Virus record (IMG/VR): IMGVR_UViG_3300017963_000188
Location: 62,001-126,000 of that record
DNA length: 64,000 bases
Strand: one strand, 5' to 3'
This document shows, in pieces, positions 17,141 through 45,672 of the stretch; within the stretch, counting starts at the first letter, position 1, and every line of letters begins with the position of its first letter. Made by a program: the position numbers and the translations under genes. The notes beneath the pieces are model-generated. The model saw nothing but the letters and a program-made list of their open reading frames with translations, had not been told where the DNA came from and searched no databases.

Positions 17141-17270
17141 CTTCCTCAGACATAGCTACAGTTTTGCCTGTTTTCAAATTTACATAATGAGAACCTATTA
17201 CGGACCATCCATCATCATCTATTTTATATTCTCCTTCAAGCATCTTGTTCTTTCCGATGTTGAAACACAA
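17052..17270 (-). CDS. small hypothetical protein
   Basis: 72-aa ORF between cca and methyltransferase; start uncertain. Confidence 0.4.
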   Translation of the reverse strand: MCFNIGKNKMLEGEYKIDDDGWSVIGSHYVNLKTGKTVAMSEEDEETDGDSQARQDLLPDDTCNSRREGGEL

Positions 17271-18594
17271 TCTGCATCAGAGCTTCCATGTTGTTGTCTT
17301 CTGGCACATCCAGGACATGCTCCATCAAAGCATTCAACACTACACCCACTTGAGGACCAGGCTTGACACCCAGAGCCTGCATCACATCATGCCCATCCAC
17401 AGCCAAGTTACGTGGACTATTGGGGGTGAAGTCTTTTTGCTCATCACATCGTTTCTTGAAGGTCACGAAATCTTCGTGGTCCTTCTCAGACATCCCAGCA
17501 GAACGACTCCCAGCTTTGTCTGCAAAGCTCAAGATGAAAAAGTCTTTCAGACGTTCTTTCCCAATCTTGTTGATAAACCTTCTCACACCAGGATCTTTCA
17601 TCCTCCTGTTGCTTTGATCTGCCATATGGTGAAACACCAAATGCTTTACGAATTCTCGTTCTTCATTGGAGAACTTCATTCGACGCATGAAGTCTTCAGT
17701 GATACGAGCTGATTCTTTTTGATGATCTATGAATGCAAATTCACCTCGACGTTCGTCAAATTCCCTGACCACAGGCTTTCCAATATCATGTAGGAAAGCA
17801 GCCAGACGGATCAAGGGCCTATCAGCAGGGACATTCTTGATCACTGCTACGGTATGTCCCCACACATCAAAGTCATGGTAATGGTTCTGCTTGCAATCAA
17901 ACATAGCCTCTGCTTCTGGGCAGAAGTGTTCAAACAGACCACAGATTCTCAACTGTCTTAGGCCAGTTTCCACATGTTCTGAAGACAGAATCTTCATGAA
18001 CTCATCCCTGATTCGTTCTGGTGATACCTTAGTCAAGACCTTTGAACAGTCCTTCATTGCTTGCAAAGTAAATGGTTCGATCTGAAATCCTAACCGAGAT
18101 GCAAATCTGATTGCTCTCATCACTCTCAGACCGTCTTCCAAAAACCGATCCTTAGCTTTCCCTACTGCTTGGATCAACCCTGCCTTCAGGTCTTTCTCTC
18201 CACCAAAAGGATCTACCAAGACATCATCAATAGGATCAAAAGCCATTGCATTGATAGTGAAGTCACGACGGCTCAGGTCCTCATTAATGTCACTGATAAA
18301 ATCCACAGAATCAGGACGACGACCATCACTGTAGTTTCCATCACCCCTTAGGGTAGTGGCTTCAAAACCCTCACCATCAATCATGACTGTAACGGTACCA
18401 TACTCGATTCCCGTGGGTACAACTTTGGGGAACATGGCTACTACTTGATCTGGAAGAGCAGAAGTACAGATGTCCCAGTCTTTTGGATCTAGACCTAGAA
18501 TTGCATCTCGAACAGACCCACCTACGATGTGGGCAGAGAAGCCTTTTTCCTTCAGGCTCTTGATGATTTCTACAACTGGCTCTGGAACTCTCAT
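17236..18594 (-). CDS. cca: CCA tRNA nucleotidyltransferase with HD domain
   Basis: VGGSVRD, DWD, DLSRRDFTINAMA, EDGLRVMRAIRF, FLHDIGK. Confidence 0.93.
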   Translation of the reverse strand: MRVPEPVVEIIKSLKEKGFSAHIVGGSVRDAILGLDPKDWDICTSALPDQVVAMFPKVVPTGIEYGTVTVMIDGEGFEATTLRGDGNYSDGRRPDSVDFISDINEDLSRRDFTINAMAFDPIDDVLVDPFGGEKDLKAGLIQAVGKAKDRFLEDGLRVMRAIRFASRLGFQIEPFTLQAMKDCSKVLTKVSPERIRDEFMKILSSEHVETGLRQLRICGLFEHFCPEAEAMFDCKQNHYHDFDVWGHTVAVIKNVPADRPLIRLAAFLHDIGKPVVREFDERRGEFAFIDHQKESARITEDFMRRMKFSNEEREFVKHLVFHHMADQSNRRMKDPGVRRFINKIGKERLKDFFILSFADKAGSRSAGMSEKDHEDFVTFKKRCDEQKDFTPNSPRNLAVDGHDVMQALGVKPGPQVGVVLNALMEHVLDVPEDNNMEALMQIVFQHRKEQDA

Positions 18595-25588: not shown

Positions 25589-27780
25589 AGATTGACAGTT
25601 TCTTCACCTAGATCGAATGTGAATGATATACCATCAACTTCTAGAGTAGTTTCATCTCTGGACTCAAATTCATCAAACCATTTTTTGCCCAAGATAACAG
25701 CAAACTTTGTCTCCTGGATCTGTGACCTGATCCCCAACATGGTCTTCTGTAGACCCTTAATGGTTTCATCAAACCATTTAGTCTTAGTTTCAGTGGAGCT
25801 GAGCTTGCTCTTTGAAGCATCGTACAGATTGATACCCTCTTCAACTAGGTACTCTACTGGAGTTCGGCTCTTCCCTACTGCAATCTTGTCCATCACCTTT
25901 TTCACAGTGGGGAGGCTCGACATCTTGGCAATCTTGATCTTGAATGCCTTGGCAATATATTGGTCAGATGCTTCAGCAGTCTCCATAGGAGGTTGATACA
26001 ATCCACCCTTCTTGAGATTGATACCATTTGCTTCCAGAAAAGCAATCTGGTCATCATTGTACTCTGTAGTTTCAACCTTCTGTTCTCCGATCTCTTCATT
26101 CTTAAGCCATTTCAGAGCCTTGATCTGACCTTTCAATTTCTGCTCTTCCATAGACAACTTGCAAAGATCTGTTGCTGAGGTTCGACCAGTAGCAATCTTT
26201 CTGTTAATTGCTGGGAGACCAGAGACATCAATAGCGTAAACTCCAGAGTTCTTGAAATCATCATCAGTTACGATACCTTTGTTCTTTAGCTCTAGATAGG
26301 TCTTCTCAGAAGTCTTTACATAGAACTTCTTGATGTGAACCCTCCCATCTTTGATGAAGGTGTAATTTCTGAACACAAAAGTATTGAAGTATTCTGGAAG
26401 TTCAAGATCAGAACCTGTCTTTCCCTCTACTTCTTTGAGATGTACCACACCCTTGATACGTGTCTGGACATTGAGATTCAATCGACTTGAATGCCATACC
26501 AATTGGTTGAATGGACATTGAATATCCTTGTCAGCCATGAACTTGGGATAATCACCCTTGGTCTTAGTAGGAACTCCAATCTTCTCATAATGGAAATTCT
26601 CATGGTATGGATAGAATGAAGCCTCATCATCATTGACTAGGATACCAAGAAGATCAAAAGCACAAAAAGCATCATCAGGGGGTAGATAATTGGCATCTCG
26701 ACCTTCAATGAATCTTTCACTGATATCCTGAAGTCCTTTATTGATGACATCTTCAGCTTGACCATACTCTTCAATTGTGAAAGCATTGGTCAAAGAATCT
26801 ACTACCTTCTTATCTCCAACCTTACCAATAAACTCAAGAGCAAGGTCAGTCTTTGCTTGTTGAGTCAGAACGAGAGCAGCAGCATAAAGTCCTTTACCAT
26901 ACTTGTTGCCAGTATCTGCAAAGTCGATATCATCAATGTTGACACGCTTCCAGCTCTTCTTGTTGGGCTTCTCATTTGACACATAAAATACAGAAGTGCC
27001 TCGACCTTTTTGTGGACTAATATACAACTTACCATCATCATCTAGTCCATAGAGCATCACACCTTGATCTGAAACAGTGAATACTGCCAGTGGATTTTCT
27101 ACCAAAGATTCCACTTCCTGTTTCGGTTCCTGTATTTCAGAGAGCTTCACAAGTCGTGTAATACTATCTGAGTATTCATTGACCATTGTGCTATGGATAA
27201 GAAGAGCACCAAGTTTCTCAGCCATTTGAGCCATGAGTTCCTTGTTGTAGTAGTACCCATAACCGATGAACATAGCACTGTGAATCTTGCCCTTGATCTT
27301 ATTGATAGCTTCAAAGATACTCTCAATCTCTCTTCTATAATTCCTGACAACTGGATATCCATCTGTAAAAAAATGAAGAGAAAAAGTATCAGACATGATT
27401 GAGAGATCTTCAATGACAGTGCTACTATTGTGAAGAATCTCTGAAAAACAGGTTGTATTCCTAACTGAACTATTCTTTCTGATAGCCCGTTCCAAGGTAT
27501 CGTAATCAGCTTCATCACTGATTTTGAATCCCTTGATGATGAAATTGAAATCCCCCTCCCCACTAAACCACCCAAGACTGAGAGTATCCCCCTTTGGCAG
27601 TTTCTTGGAAAGAATCATAAGTTGTTCACATAGGCCAGAAAGAGTGTAATACATGGAACCTGACCTGTCATAGATCCAAATATGATTGACAGGCTCTCTC
27701 TTTTCAACTGTTGTGACCTTGGACTTTACTTCTTGATGGACTAAACACATCTCGTCTGTGATTGGTACATAACTCGGCAT
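25585..27780 (-). CDS. vWA domain protein
   Basis: YDRSGSM MIDAS, FFTDG; 731 aa. Confidence 0.85.
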   Translation of the reverse strand: MPSYVPITDEMCLVHQEVKSKVTTVEKREPVNHIWIYDRSGSMYYTLSGLCEQLMILSKKLPKGDTLSLGWFSGEGDFNFIIKGFKISDEADYDTLERAIRKNSSVRNTTCFSEILHNSSTVIEDLSIMSDTFSLHFFTDGYPVVRNYRREIESIFEAINKIKGKIHSAMFIGYGYYYNKELMAQMAEKLGALLIHSTMVNEYSDSITRLVKLSEIQEPKQEVESLVENPLAVFTVSDQGVMLYGLDDDGKLYISPQKGRGTSVFYVSNEKPNKKSWKRVNIDDIDFADTGNKYGKGLYAAALVLTQQAKTDLALEFIGKVGDKKVVDSLTNAFTIEEYGQAEDVINKGLQDISERFIEGRDANYLPPDDAFCAFDLLGILVNDDEASFYPYHENFHYEKIGVPTKTKGDYPKFMADKDIQCPFNQLVWHSSRLNLNVQTRIKGVVHLKEVEGKTGSDLELPEYFNTFVFRNYTFIKDGRVHIKKFYVKTSEKTYLELKNKGIVTDDDFKNSGVYAIDVSGLPAINRKIATGRTSATDLCKLSMEEQKLKGQIKALKWLKNEEIGEQKVETTEYNDDQIAFLEANGINLKKGGLYQPPMETAEASDQYIAKAFKIKIAKMSSLPTVKKVMDKIAVGKSRTPVEYLVEEGINLYDASKSKLSSTETKTKWFDETIKGLQKTMLGIRSQIQETKFAVILGKKWFDEFESRDETTLEVDGISFTFDLGEETVNL

Positions 27781-31494: not shown

Positions 31495-33450
31495 TTATTG
31501 ATCTAGAACAGACCTGATCTTTTTTGAGATTTCACTGAGACTGAAAGGCTTTTGAATAAATCCATCACAACCTTTTTCCAACACATATGAAGCTTTCCCA
31601 TTGATGTTGTATCCACTCATCAAGACAACTTTCACTTTTGGGTTTATCTTCTTCAGAGTGTCATATATCTCTGGACCCCCAATTCCTGGCAGCACCATAT
31701 CTAACAATATCAAGTCGATACTGTCTTGATGGTTCTTATAGAAATCAATAGCTTTTAAACCATCTTTTTCAGGATAAACCGTATATCCTATAGTACTGAG
31801 AAGTCTAGTAGCTGTTTTTATGATAATATCTTCATCATCTATCAACAATATACATTCTGATCCTATCTCTAACTGATCATCCTCTATTTTATTTTCAAAT
31901 AAGATCTCTTCAGCTCTGGGGAGATACACATTTACGGTAGTCCCTTCTCCTTCAACACTATGTAGAGAAATATCCCCCTCATGATTTTTGATGATACCAT
32001 ATGCTGAAGATAAGCCAAGACCAGAACCACGTCCTACTTCTTTGGTTGTGTAGAACGGATCAAAGGCTCGTTCTATTGTTTTATTACTCATCCCACACCC
32101 AGTATCTGTCACAGATAACTTGATATAATCACCAGGTTTTAAATGAAGAGATCCTATTTCAGATACTGATATATTTGAAGTAGTAATATAAAGATCACCT
32201 CCTGTTGGCATAGCTTGACTAGCATTGACAAACAGGTTCATAAGAACTTGTTCTATCTGGCCGGGATCTGCACTGACACTCCAAATATCACTCTTCAGAC
32301 TTTTATGCACAACAATATCTTTCCTAGTTCTGCTAAATATACCAATGCTATTGTTGACTAATACATTTATGTTTGAGGTTATGATATTTGAGGTGTCTAT
32401 GCCACGACGGGCAAAGCTAAGAAGTTGTGCAGTCAGATCAGCAGCTCTCTTACCACAAATCTCTATATCTATAAGTTCTTGGCTAGTCTTCCCTTCTTTC
32501 AAACGAAGTAAAGTAGCATTTGATAGTATACCCATCAAAAGGTTGTTGAAATCATGTGCTATTCCACCAGCCAAGGTTCCAATAGCTTCCATTTTCTGAG
32601 CATGGTAAAATTGAGTTTCAAGAGCTTTTCGATCTGTGATGTCCTCTCCATAACCAATACTATATTTTATATTACCCTCGTGATCATACAACACTGAATT
32701 GTGCCAAGCTATGAGTCTTTCTTCTCCAGTCTTTGTCAGTACAGGATTTTCATAGTATTCAGATAATTGTATTTCACCATTTATCAGATTATTAAAGACT
32801 TGTTTTACTTGAGGCACATATCTTTTTGGTAAGAAGTTTTCAAACCAGTTTTTACCAATTATATGCCTACAATCATCAGAATTATAACCTAATATCTGAC
32901 ATCCTTTCTTGTTTATAAGAGCAACATTTTGATTAGAATCAATTGTTACAAAAATCACATTAGCTACATTAAGGAACTCTTTCACTGTATTTTTTTCCAT
33001 CTTTAATTCTTTTTCTACTTCATATTGTTTAGTCACATCTACGATCTGTATTATTAGACCACCTTTAAAAAATGATGTGTGAAAAGAAGCTACTTTCTCA
33101 GCACCATCTTTACACGTTATTCTGAATACAGTGCAATCCTGTCCCTCACCCTTAAGAGCTTGTGTCACATTTTTCCAAACAAAATCTCTATATTCTCCAT
33201 CAGGATATAACCTTTCTACCCATTCTCCTACATTTTTGATTTCATCAGTAGTGTACCCAATGAATTTCTCTAGAGCTTTATTGAAAAGTACAATAGAACC
33301 ATCCGACCGTCCTATAGCCGTTGGTATTGGACTTTGAAGCACAATTAACGGAAAGCATAATTCAGAGTCTAGGATATCAACATCATATTCTGGAGATCCC
33401 CTAATATCTGCTAGAGCTTTCGCTTCTTTGTCCGACATTCCTTTGATCAT
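31495..33450 (-). CDS. PAS-PAS hybrid sensor histidine kinase/response regulator
   Basis: two PAS; AHDFNN H box, N/G1/F/G2 boxes; receiver LLIDDE...LLDMVLP...KPF. Confidence 0.95.
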   Translation of the reverse strand: MIKGMSDKEAKALADIRGSPEYDVDILDSELCFPLIVLQSPIPTAIGRSDGSIVLFNKALEKFIGYTTDEIKNVGEWVERLYPDGEYRDFVWKNVTQALKGEGQDCTVFRITCKDGAEKVASFHTSFFKGGLIIQIVDVTKQYEVEKELKMEKNTVKEFLNVANVIFVTIDSNQNVALINKKGCQILGYNSDDCRHIIGKNWFENFLPKRYVPQVKQVFNNLINGEIQLSEYYENPVLTKTGEERLIAWHNSVLYDHEGNIKYSIGYGEDITDRKALETQFYHAQKMEAIGTLAGGIAHDFNNLLMGILSNATLLRLKEGKTSQELIDIEICGKRAADLTAQLLSFARRGIDTSNIITSNINVLVNNSIGIFSRTRKDIVVHKSLKSDIWSVSADPGQIEQVLMNLFVNASQAMPTGGDLYITTSNISVSEIGSLHLKPGDYIKLSVTDTGCGMSNKTIERAFDPFYTTKEVGRGSGLGLSSAYGIIKNHEGDISLHSVEGEGTTVNVYLPRAEEILFENKIEDDQLEIGSECILLIDDEDIIIKTATRLLSTIGYTVYPEKDGLKAIDFYKNHQDSIDLILLDMVLPGIGGPEIYDTLKKINPKVKVVLMSGYNINGKASYVLEKGCDGFIQKPFSLSEISKKIRSVLDQ

Positions 33451-34297: not shown

Positions 34298-35224
34298 CTA
34301 AAAAATACTTCCGTCTTCATTAAATTCATATTCATTGACCATGATATTTTCATCTACATTCTCATCAGCCATCAACCAATCATATTCTTTTTCAAGAGCT
34401 TGGTAGTAATCTTGAGCATAGTATCGAGCTTGTTCAAGACCCCATTCATTGAGTTCTTCTACTTCTCTTTCAAGAGCCTCATCAAACTTGTCTACTTCAT
34501 CTTCTGACCAGTCATCAGCATCTTCATAATTATCTACAGATGGAGCACGGATGTCGTCACCGTGCATTGTATTTGAATGATAGTAATGCCCAGAATGAGT
34601 GATGTTGAGGTGATAATCCTCATAGTCTTCACCACCCATTTCTTCCATGAGCTTTACAAAAGAAGGGAATTGCTTTTCAGCACCTTCACTATGAATGAGC
34701 TTGAGAAGGTCTACAGAACCTTCCCAGCTTGCACCGTCACCCTGACTAGCAAAACCAGAAAAGTACATCTTGTCAATGTCAAAACCCTTTTTCTCACCAT
34801 CTTCCTTGAACTGCTCTTCAAGAAAATCCCACCACTCGTAATCAAGGGCTCCATCACGCCACCATTCACGAGCCTTATCTTTAGCTTGATCGTCAAGTTC
34901 GTCAAACTTGTAGACCTCTTTTTCAACGGTTCTTGGGAGAGCTACTTTTCTTTGTGACTGATATCTATACATGTTCGACCTCTTTGCTGCCTTGTTGAAA
35001 TACTTTACTGCCTCATCTTCTTTCTTGAAGTAATGACCCCAATAGAAACCATTGCCTTTAGACCATCTCCAGACACCCCAAGGTGATGCTGAAGAGTCAG
35101 AAAAACCTAAGGCATACCATTCCTGACCATCCTTACGTTTCACATTCCTGATATCGTATGCTCCAGCACTGGTTTCCATTCCTGGGGGTAACTGCACTCC
35201 TGCTGCTTTTTTATATCTATACAT
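34298..35224 (-). CDS. two-module hypothetical protein, each module beginning MYRY
   Basis: 308 aa; second module VYKFDELDDQAKDKAREW...NEYEFNEDG; internal SD+ATG at 34972. Confidence 0.85.
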   Translation of the reverse strand: MYRYKKAAGVQLPPGMETSAGAYDIRNVKRKDGQEWYALGFSDSSASPWGVWRWSKGNGFYWGHYFKKEDEAVKYFNKAAKRSNMYRYQSQRKVALPRTVEKEVYKFDELDDQAKDKAREWWRDGALDYEWWDFLEEQFKEDGEKKGFDIDKMYFSGFASQGDGASWEGSVDLLKLIHSEGAEKQFPSFVKLMEEMGGEDYEDYHLNITHSGHYYHSNTMHGDDIRAPSVDNYEDADDWSEDEVDKFDEALEREVEELNEWGLEQARYYAQDYYQALEKEYDWLMADENVDENIMVNEYEFNEDGSIF

Positions 35225-42388: not shown

Positions 42389-42416
42389 AAAAATCTGAAA
42401 AGTATCAGTATAGAAT
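42389..42416 (+). promoter_or_regulatory. class A promoter cassette
   Basis: AAAAATCTG-N8-CAGTATAGAAT-AGGAGGTG. Confidence 0.7.
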
Positions 42417-42432
42417 AGTAGGAGGTGACGAT

Positions 42433-43005
42433 ATGATGAAAGGCTGCCGACCACTCAATGAGCAAGAAGTAGAAAAAATCATCAGTTTCTTCAGCAAGAA
42501 CCGCTATGGGCTTCGTGACATTGCCTTGGTTCTGTTGGGACTTTACACTGGTCGTCGTATCAGCCAACTTCTGTCCGTCAAGGTTGAGGATGTCTACAAC
42601 TCCAAGACCGATAAGGTAAACGACCGTCTCTGGTTTGCTCGTCAACATGTCAAGGGTAAACGTGAAGGTGAGGTCGTGATACTTCATCCCAAAGTCAAGA
42701 CTGCCATCAAGACTTGGGTGGAGGCTATGCCTACTTCTGACTTCTTGTTCTGTTCCCAGAAAGGTGGGGCTATCTCTCGGATGCAAGCTCATCGAATCCT
42801 CAAAGAGGCTGTAGAAGTCTTAAACCTAGAAGGCAAGGTTGCCACTCATAGCATGAGGAAAACCTTTGCCAAGAAGATGTACGGTGCCCTGGACAATGAT
42901 ATCTATCGTCTCCAAAGGGCTATGGGTCACACTGATATCAAGACCACTGTGAAGTACCTGAGCTTCCAGCAGGAAGATATCGATGATGCTATCCTGGGGA
43001 TGTAA
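42433..43005 (+). CDS. tyrosine recombinase, catalytic domain only
   Basis: GRRISQLL (R), HSMRKTF (HxxR), MGH, TVKYL (Y); 190 aa. Confidence 0.92.
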   Translation: MMKGCRPLNEQEVEKIISFFSKNRYGLRDIALVLLGLYTGRRISQLLSVKVEDVYNSKTDKVNDRLWFARQHVKGKREGEVVILHPKVKTAIKTWVEAMPTSDFLFCSQKGGAISRMQAHRILKEAVEVLNLEGKVATHSMRKTFAKKMYGALDNDIYRLQRAMGHTDIKTTVKYLSFQQEDIDDAILGM

Positions 43006-43006
43006 G

Positions 43007-43381
43007 ATGAAGATTGGAATACAGCAAGCCTCAAAGCTCCAACAGAACATGTCAGCTACACACCATCTTGATCGTTGTATTCACTGCGGTAAGCCAGAAG
43101 GTGATATACGATATCACCAAGATGGAGAATGTGGTAGTTACCAAAGAATATTTATAAAAACCGGAACCACTTTTGAAAACGCTACCTCTCTACAGAGATT
43201 GAAAGAGATAGAACATACTATCCCTTACATGGAGCATGAACTAACCTATGGGTGGGGCTCTCAAGAAGAGCTTGATGAGGCTCGTAAAGAAGCTGCTGAG
43301 TTGAGAAAAAAATTAGGTTTGGGATGGTATGGCTATGAACCTATTGATCAATCCGAGCCAGAATCCGATCCACAACATTAG
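43007..43381 (+). CDS. hypothetical protein
   Basis: ATG right after recombinase stop. Confidence 0.6.
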   Translation: MKIGIQQASKLQQNMSATHHLDRCIHCGKPEGDIRYHQDGECGSYQRIFIKTGTTFENATSLQRLKEIEHTIPYMEHELTYGWGSQEELDEARKEAAELRKKLGLGWYGYEPIDQSEPESDPQH

Positions 43382-43604
43382 CCTCTCTGAATAATTCTAC
43401 CCCAGCTCGTTCCTTCAAAGCATCTCCCAACATTATCATTGTTGAGGTAGCTTCTGAAAGATGATCTGAAACATCCTGAAGAGCATCATCAATATCGATG
43501 CGTTTAAATTCTCGTGGTAGAGGTACAGAGTCTATAAACTCTTTGGTCTTACGTAACTCTTCAAAGACCTCTTCCAACTTATCATAGACTTCTGAAGGTC
43601 TCAT
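43341..43604 (-). CDS. helical hypothetical protein with C-terminal NVVDRILAR motif
   Basis: ATGA coupling at 43601-04. Confidence 0.7.
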   Translation of the reverse strand: MRPSEVYDKLEEVFEELRKTKEFIDSVPLPREFKRIDIDDALQDVSDHLSEATSTMIMLGDALKERAGVELFREANVVDRILARIDQ

Positions 43605-43887
43605 TTCCACCAGTAGTTCCATCTATTTTTGGTTGTGCCCATACCATCGACAACCTGAGTGAGTTTACTTGTCCATGAGAAAAACTCATTCAGTGTATCT
43701 TCAATCTCACCTTCTAGTCCCTGACGACCAGCTTCAGAAAGTTCTTCTAAAAGTTCCTCAAGTGTGTCTTGAGATTCTTCTAGCTGCCCAATTCCTTCTC
43801 TAGCTTTAGTGATAGCATCATTGAGTTTATTGACATATCCAGACATCTCTGGAAGAGCAGCAGATTTTTTGTTCGATACCGGTACAT
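43601..43887 (-). CDS. helical protein; MYRY start (43887) joins body only via -1 frameshift
   Basis: AGGAGG SD before 43887; A AAA AAT run; track ORF 43601..43846 has no SD. Confidence 0.6.
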
Positions 43888-43930
43888 GGTAAGCCTCCTT
43901 TATATCTATAAAAGCAAACTTATAAAATGA

Positions 43931-44584
43931 TTATGATTTCAATTCACAGTGATGTTGGATCATCTCGATGATTTTTTGGGGGTCTTGATTGTCGATGTTC
44001 CATGGGATATCTATGATGTGCATACCTCTTGACCAAGGATGCATTCCTGATCTCATTTCCACCAGTAGGTCTAAATATCCCTTTTGAAGGTCCTTTAGAT
44101 AATCAAGAGTGATGTCTTTTTCCGCTTCACGTCCACGCTTCCCTATTCGTTCTAGAGCAACTTTTGGATCTGTATCAAGCCAAATCATTAGTGAAGGTGG
44201 AATAAGGCTACAAGCCATAATCTCGTAACACTGAGAGTATGTTTCCCACTCTAGCTGAGCTATGTTTTCATACAGCATATGGAGATGGCAGAATACTCTA
44301 TCTCCTGGCATTGAACGGTCAATTACAGCTCCAGACCAAGCACTATCAGGACTCACAACATCATAGGCAGCAGCTTTTTGCATAGCATACCTTCTATATA
44401 GAAGATCAATCTGCATGGGAAAAGCCCAACGCTTTGGCTCCTGATAAAATAGTTCAAGATAAGGATTTGACTTCACAGGTTCCTGAAGGACCCGGAATCC
44501 AAGAACCTCACCAATTTTCTTAGCTAGGGTGCTCTTGCCACATCCAATGATACCTTCAAGAACAACCAATGGTTTTTTCTTCAT
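43931..44584 (-). CDS. deoxynucleoside kinase
   Basis: LEGIIGCGKST, QEPV, IDRSMPGDRVF, RIGKRGREAE. Confidence 0.92.
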   Translation of the reverse strand: MKKKPLVVLEGIIGCGKSTLAKKIGEVLGFRVLQEPVKSNPYLELFYQEPKRWAFPMQIDLLYRRYAMQKAAAYDVVSPDSAWSGAVIDRSMPGDRVFCHLHMLYENIAQLEWETYSQCYEIMACSLIPPSLMIWLDTDPKVALERIGKRGREAEKDITLDYLKDLQKGYLDLLVEMRSGMHPWSRGMHIIDIPWNIDNQDPQKIIEMIQHHCELKS

Positions 44585-45504
44585 GACTCCTCCTTCTTTT
44601 TCTTGGGTGGTTTACTATTTGGGTTGTTGTTCCAATACTCCAAACCTCTAAATTCTCCCCTGTATTCAAAATCATCAAATACAGCAGGCCAACGCTGGAT
44701 ACATTCTTTCAGTAGATTCACCATGGTACGACGGATCTCCCAGTGTGCAGGCCAATCACATCGCATCTTGAAGACATGTCTCCACTCCCTGAAATTAGCT
44801 GACATGACTATTTTTGAAGTTATACCAATTGGGAGGAACTGTCTAGCATTCTCAGGTTTGTGTTTATTTTTTCTGAGATTTCGATAGACTTGTTCATTCA
44901 AAGCTATCCAATCTTCTATAGATATTTGAATCTTGTTTCTATCTAACAAAGGTTCTAAAGATTTTGTGATGTCAGATAGTAAACCCAATTGAATACCGAG
45001 CTGACCGGATATAAAATTATCATCTATCTGAATATTTGAGAGTTTATAAGATACAGATTCAATTGATTTCTTCAACGTCAACAAATCACTGTGAACCAAT
45101 GATATTACCTGGTTAGTTGCAGCTTTACCCATCTTCTTTTGATACTCGTTAATATCCAGTTCTAAGACGATTTCCATACGATCCATTGTAGGTGGAAGTA
45201 CAAATTGAAAATCGGATTCATCTACATATCGAGTTGATTCTTGACCAAATGCGGCAAGTCTATGTCTAACCAACTCATGGGTGAAACCTCTAGAATGATC
45301 ATTAAATTCCACTGTCATGAAACTATGTTCAATCATAGCTTCATGCCCACGTCTACGAAGCATTCTCACAAATGTATCTGCTGATTCTTCTGTGATTTTC
45401 TCTTCAGATCTATAACAAGTTCTTCCCGCATCTTCAATAGTTCTAAGAGGTGTGTCATAGACCGCTATGATTCGATAATTACCAGCGTCTTGAAAGATTT
45501 CCAT
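44581..45504 (-). CDS. thyX: FAD-dependent thymidylate synthase with internal insertion
   Basis: GHEAMIEH, SRGFTHELVRHR...QESTRY, ARQFLP, AHWEIR. Confidence 0.93.
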   Translation of the reverse strand: MEIFQDAGNYRIIAVYDTPLRTIEDAGRTCYRSEEKITEESADTFVRMLRRRGHEAMIEHSFMTVEFNDHSRGFTHELVRHRLAAFGQESTRYVDESDFQFVLPPTMDRMEIVLELDINEYQKKMGKAATNQVISLVHSDLLTLKKSIESVSYKLSNIQIDDNFISGQLGIQLGLLSDITKSLEPLLDRNKIQISIEDWIALNEQVYRNLRKNKHKPENARQFLPIGITSKIVMSANFREWRHVFKMRCDWPAHWEIRRTMVNLLKECIQRWPAVFDDFEYRGEFRGLEYWNNNPNSKPPKKKKEES

Positions 45505-45559
45505 GATGTGTCCTTTGTTAGGGGGTCCAGATTTTTGATATTATACTAGCAGAAAAAAT

Positions 45560-45597
45560 TAATGGGAGAGCATCGAAGGGGGGATGCTCTCCCATTA
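45560..45597 (-). terminator. rho-independent terminator
   Basis: 15-bp perfect stem 45560-74/45583-97 then T-run on minus strand. Confidence 0.75.
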
Positions 45598-45672
45598 GAG
45601 AGTTTTGCAAAGAGCCTCCTCTAAAGGGAGTTCCCAGGATTGGGACTAGAGGTGAAGACCCCTTGCGGTCTA
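45560..45672 (-). ncRNA. candidate ~115-nt small RNA
   Basis: stems 45656-60/45667-71, 45618-23/45647-52, 45632-36/45641-45 plus terminator; no ORF. Confidence 0.45.

What the first reader, a model, noticed from the sequence alone, without database searches (positions are those of the whole stretch)
43780..43900. MYRY leader joined to its gene only through a -1 slippery site
A strong AGGAGG SD precedes ATG 43887 (MYRYRT). That frame stops at 43780, while the 81-aa body (ATG 43846, no SD) is in the -1 frame. The junction is A AAA AAT (six A, 43865-70), an X XXY YYZ heptamer. Slippage gives MYRYRT-K(K/N)-SAALPEMSG, matching RKVALP in the 34972 module. Possible causes: programmed frameshift controlling leader attachment, a recent inactivating deletion, or a homopolymer sequencing error.
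Basis: partly seen in the sequence, partly recalled or inferred. Interest (0 to 1): 0.7.

Follow-up and report, generated by a model that had tools for sequence, protein, structure and literature searches.

The report
Frameshifted MYRY-leader gene in a jumbo phage
One gene of a phage-specific family that shares a short "MYRY" start has been cut from its start codon by a one-base shift in a run of six A's; this is most likely an ordinary mutation, not a programmed recoding signal.

Summary
On the minus strand, AAGGAGG and ATG 43887 open a 35-codon frame (MYRYRTKN...). The 81-codon body (ATG 43846, no SD) lies in the -1 frame, and the two frames meet at A6 (43870-43865). The window is part of a 358-kb jumbo phage from a sediment metagenome. 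Thirteen unrelated genes in it start with MYRY plus a basic stretch; only this one is out of frame. Coding signal switches frame exactly at the A run, and the body-frame residues after it (SAALPE) resemble the other leaders. So this was once a single MYRY gene.

Every public assembly found shows A6, and no in-frame allele is on record. An assembly error is therefore unlikely, though raw reads could not be read.

Nothing points to programmed frameshifting:
- A_AAA_AAT is a poor bacterial motif and occurs in frame 22 times in ordinary genes here.
- No stimulator is significant; there is only a 6-bp hairpin, 10 nt downstream.
- No paralogue is frameshifted.
- No orthologue exists to test conservation; the body is an ORFan.

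Best reading: a real one-base indel in a homopolymer that uncouples the body from its ribosome site. Leaky slippage remains possible. The MYRY leader family is the more interesting feature.

The parts
43894..43900 (-). Shine-Dalgarno AAGGAGG, 6 nt before ATG 43887
   Evidence: Read directly. It serves only the leader frame: the body-frame codons at SD spacing are CAT and GTA, which are not starts.
43780..43887 (-). Leader-frame ORF of 35 codons. The first 7 codons (MYRYRTK) are the true family leader; the 28 codons after the A run are out-of-frame read-through.
   Evidence: The tail scores -0.36 per codon against this genome's codon usage. It resembles other leaders no better than shuffles do (404 of 500 shuffles reach its score).
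43864..43870 (-). A_AAA_AAT heptamer, made of the A6 run 43870-43865 plus T 43864. This is the point where the coding frame changes.
   Evidence: A6 is identical in Logan contigs of runs X1 and X2 and in ENA contig L003. The same in-frame heptamer occurs 22 times in 271 long ORFs of this genome.
43847..43870 (-). Body-frame codons KKSAALPE, the former second half of the leader. They now lie upstream of any start codon in their frame.
   Evidence: Coding score +1.06 per codon. The continuation RTK-X-SAALPEMSG.. matches the other 11 leaders better than 498 of 500 shuffles.
43601..43846 (-). 81-aa body ORF: an acidic predicted helical hairpin that gene finders call as a gene.
   Evidence: Coding score +0.46 per codon. 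Only itself found among 5.8 billion proteins (word-index search) and 1.84 billion representatives. Atlas model is a helical hairpin, pLDDT 0.82.
43838..43853 (-). 6-bp hairpin UCCAGA-GAUG-UCUGGA, 10 nt after the heptamer, with AUG 43846 in its loop
   Evidence: -8.1 kcal/mol, z -1.24, and 28 of 200 shuffles fold as well. The 126-nt context has z +0.22. Not significant.
43599..43626 (-). Second copy of a direct repeat (18 nt exact, CTACTGGTGGAAATGAGA). It supplies the last 7 codons and stop of the body, and the first 8 codons of the next ORF.
   Evidence: The 18-mer occurs only twice in the genome.
44051..44078 (-). First copy of the direct repeat, inside the dNK gene (codons LDLLVEMR)
   Evidence: The Pfam dNK match spans residues 8-213 of 217, so this copy is the original.
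43931..44584 (-). Upstream gene: deoxynucleoside kinase, in the same frame as the body
   Evidence: PF01712, E 6.5e-42
43341..43622 (-). Downstream 93-aa ORF of unknown function, overlapping the end of the body
   Evidence: No Pfam hit.

Best explanation
This is a member of a phage-specific gene family whose proteins begin with MYRY followed by a short basic, Ala-rich stretch. The gene has suffered a real one-base length change in a lysine-codon A run. The most economical history is the loss of one A from a run of seven. The only ribosome-binding site and start codon (AAGGAGG, ATG 43887) now lead into a 35-codon nonsense frame. The still-intact 81-codon body lies in the -1 frame without an SD. 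Most ribosomes therefore make a useless 35-aa peptide. The body can be made only weakly: without its leader from AUG 43846, or with its leader through rare unprogrammed -1 slippage on A_AAA_AAU. The gene is thus a young pseudogene or a strongly down-tuned accessory gene, not a recoding device. Shown: the anatomy, the frame switch of the coding signal at the A run, family membership, and A6 in all available assemblies. Inferred: the direction of the indel, its recency, and the low expression.
For: - Family: 13 real MYRY starts against about 1-2 expected by chance. This start has the best SD of all of them.
- Frame switch: the leader-frame tail scores -0.36 per codon, while the body frame over the same bases scores +0.66 and KKSAALPE scores +1.06.
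- Leader similarity: the body-frame continuation, with X at the break, resembles the other leaders (sum score 185 against 150.7 +/- 11.2; 2 of 500 shuffles reach it). The leader-frame tail does not.
- Paralogues: the other 12 MYRY genes are in frame. One of them (window 35224) carries an in-frame A6 at the same place, ATG TAT AGA TAT AAA AAA.
- A runs are common: the genome has 318 A6/T6, 85 A7/T7 and 15 A8/T8 runs. They are ordinary indel hot spots.
- A6 is reproduced by a Logan contig in each of two runs and by an ENA MEGAHIT contig that is 100% identical over 12,246 bp.
- The 81-aa product is a one-sequence cluster, and 6 contigs that carry it were read. No in-frame variant of about 90 aa is in the 5.8-billion-protein collection.
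- No recoding signals: fold z +0.22 and -1.24, and the SD lies 23 nt upstream of the heptamer. In E. coli the efficient motifs are V_VV.A_AA.R. Unstimulated motifs give only 2-10 times a 0.055% background (PMC4066793).
Against: - No raw reads could be read, only contigs, which drop minority variants. Runs X1 and X2 look like one data set, so the assemblies may all rest on one read set.
- The body ORF is still intact (81 codons; 110 open codons in its frame) with good codon usage. That is expected for a recent event, but it would also fit a gene still in use.
- With no orthologue anywhere, conservation of the broken state cannot be tested either way.
Confidence: 0.65

Rival explanations
1. Programmed or exploited -1 ribosomal frameshifting. 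A set fraction of ribosomes that start at ATG 43887 slip on A_AAA_AAU and make MYRYRTK(K/N)SAALPE-body. The rest make a short peptide. The site would set how much cargo carries the leader.
For: - Formal X_XXY_YYZ heptamer with a -1 overlap and a strong SD on the upstream frame.
- A small hairpin lies 10 nt downstream.
- The body ORF is intact with good codon usage.
- AAA-AAA near a 5' end can give detectable -1 products in E. coli (abstract of PMC1851650).
Against: - A_AA.A_AA.U is not among the efficient bacterial motifs, and unstimulated levels are about 0.1-0.5% (PMC4066793).
- The heptamer occurs in frame 22 times in ordinary long ORFs here.
- The hairpin and its context are not better than shuffles.
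- There is no SD-like stimulator 10-14 nt upstream.
- None of the 12 paralogues uses such a layout.
- The 28-codon 0-frame tail looks non-coding.
- No conservation data exist.
Confidence: 0.1
2. Sequencing or assembly error: the phage really has seven A and an ordinary in-frame MYRY gene.
For: The break sits in a homopolymer. Word depth is only about 10.
Against: Four assemblies from three pipelines (IMG scaffold, ENA MEGAHIT k141 contig, and a Logan contig in each of two runs) agree on A6 with no indel. About 220 A6-or-longer runs on the coding strand of the 271 long ORFs (270 kb) do not break their frames, so the assembly is not prone to homopolymer errors. No A7-derived protein is on record.
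Confidence: 0.08
3. A working two-ORF arrangement. The 35-codon ORF acts as an upstream leader peptide whose translation opens the hairpin around AUG 43846. The leaderless 81-aa protein is then the intended product.
For: AUG 43846 sits in the loop of the only local hairpin. Gene finders call the 81-aa ORF. Some genes of this phage start without a clear SD.
Against: The body-frame codons upstream of AUG 43846 (KKSAALPE) carry strong coding signal and match the leader consensus. That is unexpected if they were never translated. The uORF tail has non-coding codon usage. The hairpin is not significant.
Confidence: 0.1
4. A reversible on/off switch. The population flips between A6 and A7 by replication slippage, which toggles expression and leader attachment.
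For: Homopolymer location. The genome tolerates many A7 and A8 runs.
Against: Only A6 is seen in every contig and protein record. A run of six is short for an efficient contingency locus. No minority data are available.
Confidence: 0.07

Closest known systems
Homopolymer frameshift pseudogenes or 'savior indel' genes in phage and bacterial genomes
   Same: A one-base length change in an A run separates start and body. Coding signal continues in the other frame. Paralogues are intact. Low-level slippage could partly compensate.
   Different: No in-frame orthologue is available to prove the ancestral state. The broken piece is only a 7-codon N-terminal leader that carries the gene's sole ribosome site.
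dnaX and IS3/IS911-type programmed -1 frameshift sites (A_AAA_AAG with SD-like and stem-loop stimulators)
   Same: An A-rich X_XXY_YYZ heptamer and a -1 overlap of two frames.
   Different: The last base is U instead of G or A. There is no upstream SD-like element at 10-14 nt and no significant downstream structure. The site lies at codons 6-8 of the ORF. No conservation is seen, and the 0-frame product is a nonsense peptide.
T4 capsid targeting sequence on internal proteins (IPI-III, Alt): a conserved N-terminal ~10-aa leader on unrelated cargo in a hyperplastic locus
   Same: This analogy concerns the MYRY leader only. A short conserved N-terminal peptide sits on otherwise unrelated, often acidic small proteins. 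There are signs of recombination at the leader (in-frame tandem MYRY fusions).
   Different: There is no sequence similarity to the T4 leader. No T4-type prohead protease was found by PF03420, although the control genomes were also blank. No consistent LxE or S/A/G-x-E cleavage motif follows the leader. Virion location is unknown. The comparison is drawn from general knowledge of T4, not tested here.

Membership tests
Programmed -1 ribosomal frameshift site | Slippery heptamer X_XXY_YYZ in the 0 frame at the overlap of two ORFs in a -1 relation | tested here: met
   A_AAA_AAT at 43870-43864; frames are offset by 41 nt. The motif is of the low-efficiency class in E. coli (PMC4066793) and occurs in frame 22 times in ordinary genes here.
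Programmed -1 ribosomal frameshift site | Stimulatory element: a stable downstream structure about 5-9 nt away, and/or an upstream SD-like sequence about 10-14 nt away | tested here: not met
   There is only a 6-bp hairpin at 10 nt (-8.1 kcal/mol, z -1.24). The 126-nt context has z +0.22. The only SD-like sequence is the gene's own RBS, 23 nt upstream.
Programmed -1 ribosomal frameshift site | Conservation of the site and of both frames in relatives | tested here: inconclusive
   No orthologue exists in IMG/VR, JGI metagenome contigs, 5.8 billion proteins or 1.84 billion representatives. All 12 paralogous MYRY genes are in frame.
Programmed -1 ribosomal frameshift site | The trans-frame protein is actually made at a defined ratio | not testable with these tools
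   No RNA run was listed. There are no proteomic data.
Frameshift-disrupted gene (homopolymer indel) | Coding signal passes from one frame to the other at the break, and the read-through tail is non-coding | tested here: met
   -0.36 against +0.66 per codon over the same bases; 2 of 500 against 404 of 500 shuffles.
Frameshift-disrupted gene (homopolymer indel) | The break is real in the DNA, not an assembly artefact | tested here: inconclusive
   A6 appears in four assemblies from three pipelines and no in-frame allele is on record. However, only contigs were available, and X1 and X2 are probably one data set.
Frameshift-disrupted gene (homopolymer indel) | An intact in-frame orthologue exists in relatives | tested here: inconclusive
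   No orthologue was found anywhere. Only paralogues are intact.
MYRY-leader gene family of this phage | ATG-Tyr-Arg-Tyr at a true N-terminus with an RBS | tested here: met
   ATG 43887 follows AAGGAGG, with a stop 4 codons upstream in frame.
MYRY-leader gene family of this phage | A basic, Ala-rich stretch after MYRY that continues into a body | tested here: met
   Met only through the -1 frame: RTK-x-SAALPE, compared with KKAAGVQLPP, QSQRKVALPR and RKARRVRAMGILP.
T4-like capsid targeting sequence (considered for the leader's role) | A prohead-protease cleavage motif closes the leader, and a T4-type protease is present | tested here: inconclusive
   PF03420 and PF04586 gave no hit in the genome, but the PF03420 controls were also blank. 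One ORF matches a PHROG 'head maturation protease' at E 6e-11. By eye, a Glu lies within 10-25 residues of every leader, but not in one motif.

The most novel reading that the evidence does not exclude
MYRY plus its basic tail is an N-terminal address tag peculiar to this jumbo phage, for example for packaging or targeting of accessory proteins. Under this reading the A run in this gene is used to set what fraction of this cargo carries the tag. That could happen through low-level -1 slippage very early in the ORF or through reversible A6/A7 indels. It would be a recoding or contingency switch acting on a targeting leader rather than on a C-terminal extension.
Probability: 0.08. Interest if true: 0.6.

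Novelty: new member of a known kind. Interest (0 to 1): 0.25.

Why it matters
As a frameshift the site matters little. It is best annotated as a disrupted or uncoupled MYRY-family gene, not as a recoding site. This is a warning that an X_XXY_YYZ heptamer at a frame break in an A-rich lysine stretch is not evidence of programmed slippage.

The context matters more. An uncultured 358-kb phage puts the same short basic N-terminal peptide on 13 unrelated proteins, and homologues of two of those bodies in other phages lack it. Such grafted leaders are how T4 addresses internal proteins to the capsid, so the family gives a testable handle on protein targeting in a jumbo phage.

Tried and rejected
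- Relatives of the body. All of the following gave nothing but the gene itself: IMG/VR peptide scan, phage DNA BLAST, 5.8-billion-protein word search, and full HMMER on 1.84 billion representatives. The last also gave two long repetitive coiled-coil proteins, taken as compositional hits.
- Synteny through the neighbour dNK. IMG/VR and JGI metagenome contigs gave only 51-55% relatives in unrelated contexts, with no MYRY gene.
- Synteny through a 472-aa neighbour gave nothing.
- Same-phage fragments G001 and G002, found through the head protease, do not cover the locus. More distant relatives' fragments have no MYRY pattern, but they cover only the structural region.
- The longer leader as a DNA pattern in IMG/VR and as a profile in the protein collection matched nothing outside this phage.
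- RNA runs: none was listed.
- A second read-laying at 80% likeness, meant to find diverged strains, gave only short chance pieces. It did show that X1 and X2 share contig sets.
- The three other short MYRY ORFs (genome 353723+, 77037-, 9344-) were checked as possible further frameshifted members. They were rejected as chance hits: they have no SD and no continuing frame, and one lies inside another open frame.
- Promoter and terminator scan: nothing above shuffles.
- Literature search for 'MYRY' together with 'phage': no paper.

Full report
**What the window is.** The window is bases 62001-126000 of a single 358,038-bp IMG/VR virus record. The record has GC 40.6% and CheckV estimates it as complete, so it is a jumbo phage. 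The same scaffold is Ga0180437_10000024 in the JGI metagenome collection. Runs that hold the sequence are labelled sediment and seawater metagenomes. No deposited phage matches the region at the DNA level. The finding lies in a minus-strand gene block:
- ThyX, 45504-44581
- deoxynucleoside kinase, 44584-43931
- the MYRY gene
- a 93-aa ORF, 43622-43341

A 132-aa ORF and a small tyrosine-recombinase-like gene lie on the opposite strand.

**Check of the observation.**
- AAGGAGG (43900-43894) lies 6 nt before ATG 43887.
- That frame reads MYRYRTKN... and stops at 43782-43780 after 35 codons.
- The 81-codon ORF (ATG 43846 to 43601) is in the -1 frame. Its frame is open upstream as far as the dNK stop codon, with no ATG, GTG or TTG before 43846 and no SD.
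- The two frames meet at a run of exactly six A (43870-43865) followed by T. In the 0 frame this reads A_AAA_AAT.
- A -1 reading gives MYRYRTK(K/N)SAALPEMSG...

**The MYRY family is real.**
- The codon pattern ATG-TAY-(CGN/AGR)-TAY is expected about once or twice in the genome by my own arithmetic. It occurs 16 times.
- Thirteen occurrences open real ORFs of 80-496 aa. A stop codon usually lies a few codons upstream and an SD is usually present. Three are chance hits without SD or continuing frame.
- All 13 lie between 17.5 and 106 kb of the genome.
- Codon choice varies and the upstream DNA is unrelated, so the conservation is at the peptide level.
- After MYRY comes a basic, Ala-rich stretch, for example RKARRVRAMGILP, KRARKVRAM, KKAAGVQLPP or QSQRKVALPR. 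Net charge over the first 14 residues is +3 to +6 in ten of the twelve intact genes, against 0.25 +/- 2.0 for the genome.
- The bodies are unrelated to each other. Several are strongly acidic.

**This gene was once a single in-frame member of the family.** Three results show it.
- Coding score. Using a codon-usage score trained on this genome's long ORFs, the leader-frame tail after the A run scores -0.36 per codon. The body frame over the same bases scores +0.66. The eight body-frame codons between the A run and ATG 43846 (KKSAALPE) score +1.06. The coding signal therefore changes frame exactly at the A run.
- Leader similarity. With X at the break, the continuation RTK-X-SAALPEMSG... matches the other eleven leaders better than 498 of 500 shuffles. 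The leader-frame tail does no better than shuffles.
- Start site. The SD can serve only ATG 43887, because the body-frame codons at SD spacing are CAT and GTA.

**Is A6 real?** A Logan contig in each of two runs covers 43300-44300 with no difference or indel. An ENA MEGAHIT contig (L003, ERZ27256798) is identical over 12,246 bp, including the A6. The 81-aa product is a one-sequence cluster, and six contigs that carry it were read. No in-frame version of about 90 aa exists in the 5.8-billion-protein collection.

The assembly is not generally prone to homopolymer errors. About 220 A6-or-longer runs lie on the coding strand of the 271 long ORFs without breaking them.

There are caveats. Only contigs could be read, and these drop minority alleles. 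Assembly error is therefore unlikely but not excluded.

**Is it programmed frameshifting?** I found no positive evidence.
- In E. coli the efficient heptamers are V_VV.A_AA.R. A_AA.A_AA.C is called inefficient. A_AA.A_AA.U is not among the motifs listed as exceeding 0.10% without a stimulator. Unstimulated motifs reach only 2-10 times a background of 0.055% (PMC4066793).
- In this phage the in-frame heptamer A_AAA_AAT occurs 22 times within ordinary long ORFs. It is neither avoided nor special.
- The only local structure is a 6-bp hairpin (43853-43838, -8.1 kcal/mol). It lies 10 nt after the heptamer and holds AUG 43846 in its loop. Of 200 shuffles, 28 fold as well, and the 126-nt context has z +0.22.
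- The only SD-like element is the gene's own RBS, 23 nt upstream. That is outside the spacing that stimulates -1 shifts in dnaX (general knowledge).
- None of the other 12 family members is split. One of them (window 35224) has an in-frame A6 at the same position in its leader.
- Conservation cannot be tested. The body is an ORFan, and neither dNK-based nor neighbour-based synteny searches found a relative with this locus. No RNA run was listed.

**Most likely mechanism.** Lysine codons in the basic leader create A runs, and one such run changed length by one base. Loss of one A from a run of seven is the simplest history, and the genome holds 85 A7/T7 runs.

Ribosomes loading at the strong RBS now translate 7 correct codons and 28 nonsense codons, then stop. 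The body can be made only in two weak ways. One is SD-less initiation at AUG 43846, which gives a protein without the leader. The other is rare unprogrammed -1 slippage, which gives a leader-bearing protein at well below 1% if the E. coli figures apply.

The body is still intact. Either the event is recent or residual expression is still useful. I cannot tell which.

The 3' end of the gene also shows recent rearrangement. An 18-nt exact direct repeat occurs only twice in the genome. One copy lies inside dNK, where it encodes LDLLVEMR. The other supplies the last seven codons and stop of the body in another frame, and the first eight codons (MELLVEMR) of the next ORF in the dNK frame. This fits a fast-evolving accessory locus.

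**What the leader might be (inference only).** Homologues of the 34972 body number 437. They are typically about 200 aa and start MPRxxxTxVYxFDEL. None of the 119 listed homologues from other genomes carries MYRY.
- The nearest relative (P0008, 61% identity, from a GC-31% phage contig) reads ..FSNVQSRKLS.. where this phage reads ..MYRYQSQRKVA...
- That contig also holds MYRY-less homologues of the C-terminus of the 496-aa MYRY protein.
- The longer leader is absent from IMG/VR and from the protein collection outside this phage.

So the leader was grafted onto pre-existing cargo in this lineage. Two in-frame tandem MYRY arrangements (window 35224/34972 and genome 27148/27217) suggest recombination at the leader.

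This resembles the T4 capsid-targeting leader on internal proteins (general knowledge, see PMC3012670). I found no consistent cleavage motif and no T4-type protease. There is one ORF with a weak 'head maturation protease' PHROG match.

**Verdict.** The title's implication of a programmed slippery site is not supported. The best reading is an ordinary homopolymer indel, at confidence about 0.65.

| Alternative | Confidence |
|---|---|
| Programmed or exploited slippage | about 0.1 |
| Working uORF plus leaderless body | about 0.1 |
| Assembly error | about 0.08 |
| Reversible switch | about 0.07 |

Interest in the frameshift itself is low. The leader family is the feature worth following.

Noticed in passing
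window 3200(+), 35224(-), 34972(-), 40143(-), 43887(-); genome G000 17549+, 27148+, 27217+, 27669+, 54247-, 44950-, 43293-, 42125-: Thirteen otherwise unrelated ORFs start with MYRY plus a basic, Ala-rich stretch. All lie in the first 106 kb of the 358-kb phage. Codons vary and the upstream DNA is unrelated, so the peptide is what is conserved. Homologues of two of the bodies in other phages lack the leader, and the long form of the leader is found nowhere else in the collections searched.
   Followed up: partly
window 34301-35224 (-); genome G000 27148-27474 (+): There are two in-frame tandem MYRY arrangements. In the window, an 84-codon MYRY module runs without a stop into the MYRY start at 34972. 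In the genome, a 23-codon MYRY remnant resembling the N-terminus of the gene at genome 43293 is fused in frame to the MYRY gene at 27217. These look like recombination at the leader, or internal starts.
   Followed up: partly
window 43599-43626 and 44051-44078: An 18-nt exact direct repeat (28 nt at 86%) is spaced 452 nt apart and is unique in the genome. It brackets the 3' end of dNK and the whole MYRY gene. The downstream copy encodes the body's last 7 codons and stop, and also the first 8 codons of the next ORF in the dNK frame. It is probably a recombination scar.
   Followed up: partly
window 31495-33447 (-): A phage-encoded 650-aa hybrid sensor histidine kinase (two PAS domains, HisKA, HATPase_c and a receiver domain) lies next to the MYRY modules.
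   Followed up: no
window 17236-18591 (-): CCA-adding enzyme or poly(A) polymerase family protein with an HD domain. An orthologue is syntenic in the related GC-31% phage contig L037.
   Followed up: no
window 34301-34972 (-): The body of the '34972 module' belongs to a large family (437 hits) of acidic proteins of about 200 aa with the conserved start ..VYxFDELxxxAKEKAREWYRxGALDYEWWD. It has no Pfam model. One UniRef member is named 'Antitoxin of toxin-antitoxin stability system'.
   Followed up: partly
window 42433-43005 (+): A short (190-aa) tyrosine recombinase (Phage_integrase, E 3.4e-25) lies on the opposite strand just beyond the 93-aa and 132-aa ORFs.
   Followed up: no
runs X1 and X2 laid on window 42400-45600: The two runs that hold the phage are labelled 2018 sediment and 2021 seawater.
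   Followed up: partly
genome G000 211503-213008 (+), outside the window: A 501-aa ORF matches PHROG 'head maturation protease' (E 6e-11). It has identical copies on two other IMG/VR contigs (90 kb and 186 kb) and relatives at 31-58% identity on 14 other contigs. It is a useful marker for this phage group.
   Followed up: partly
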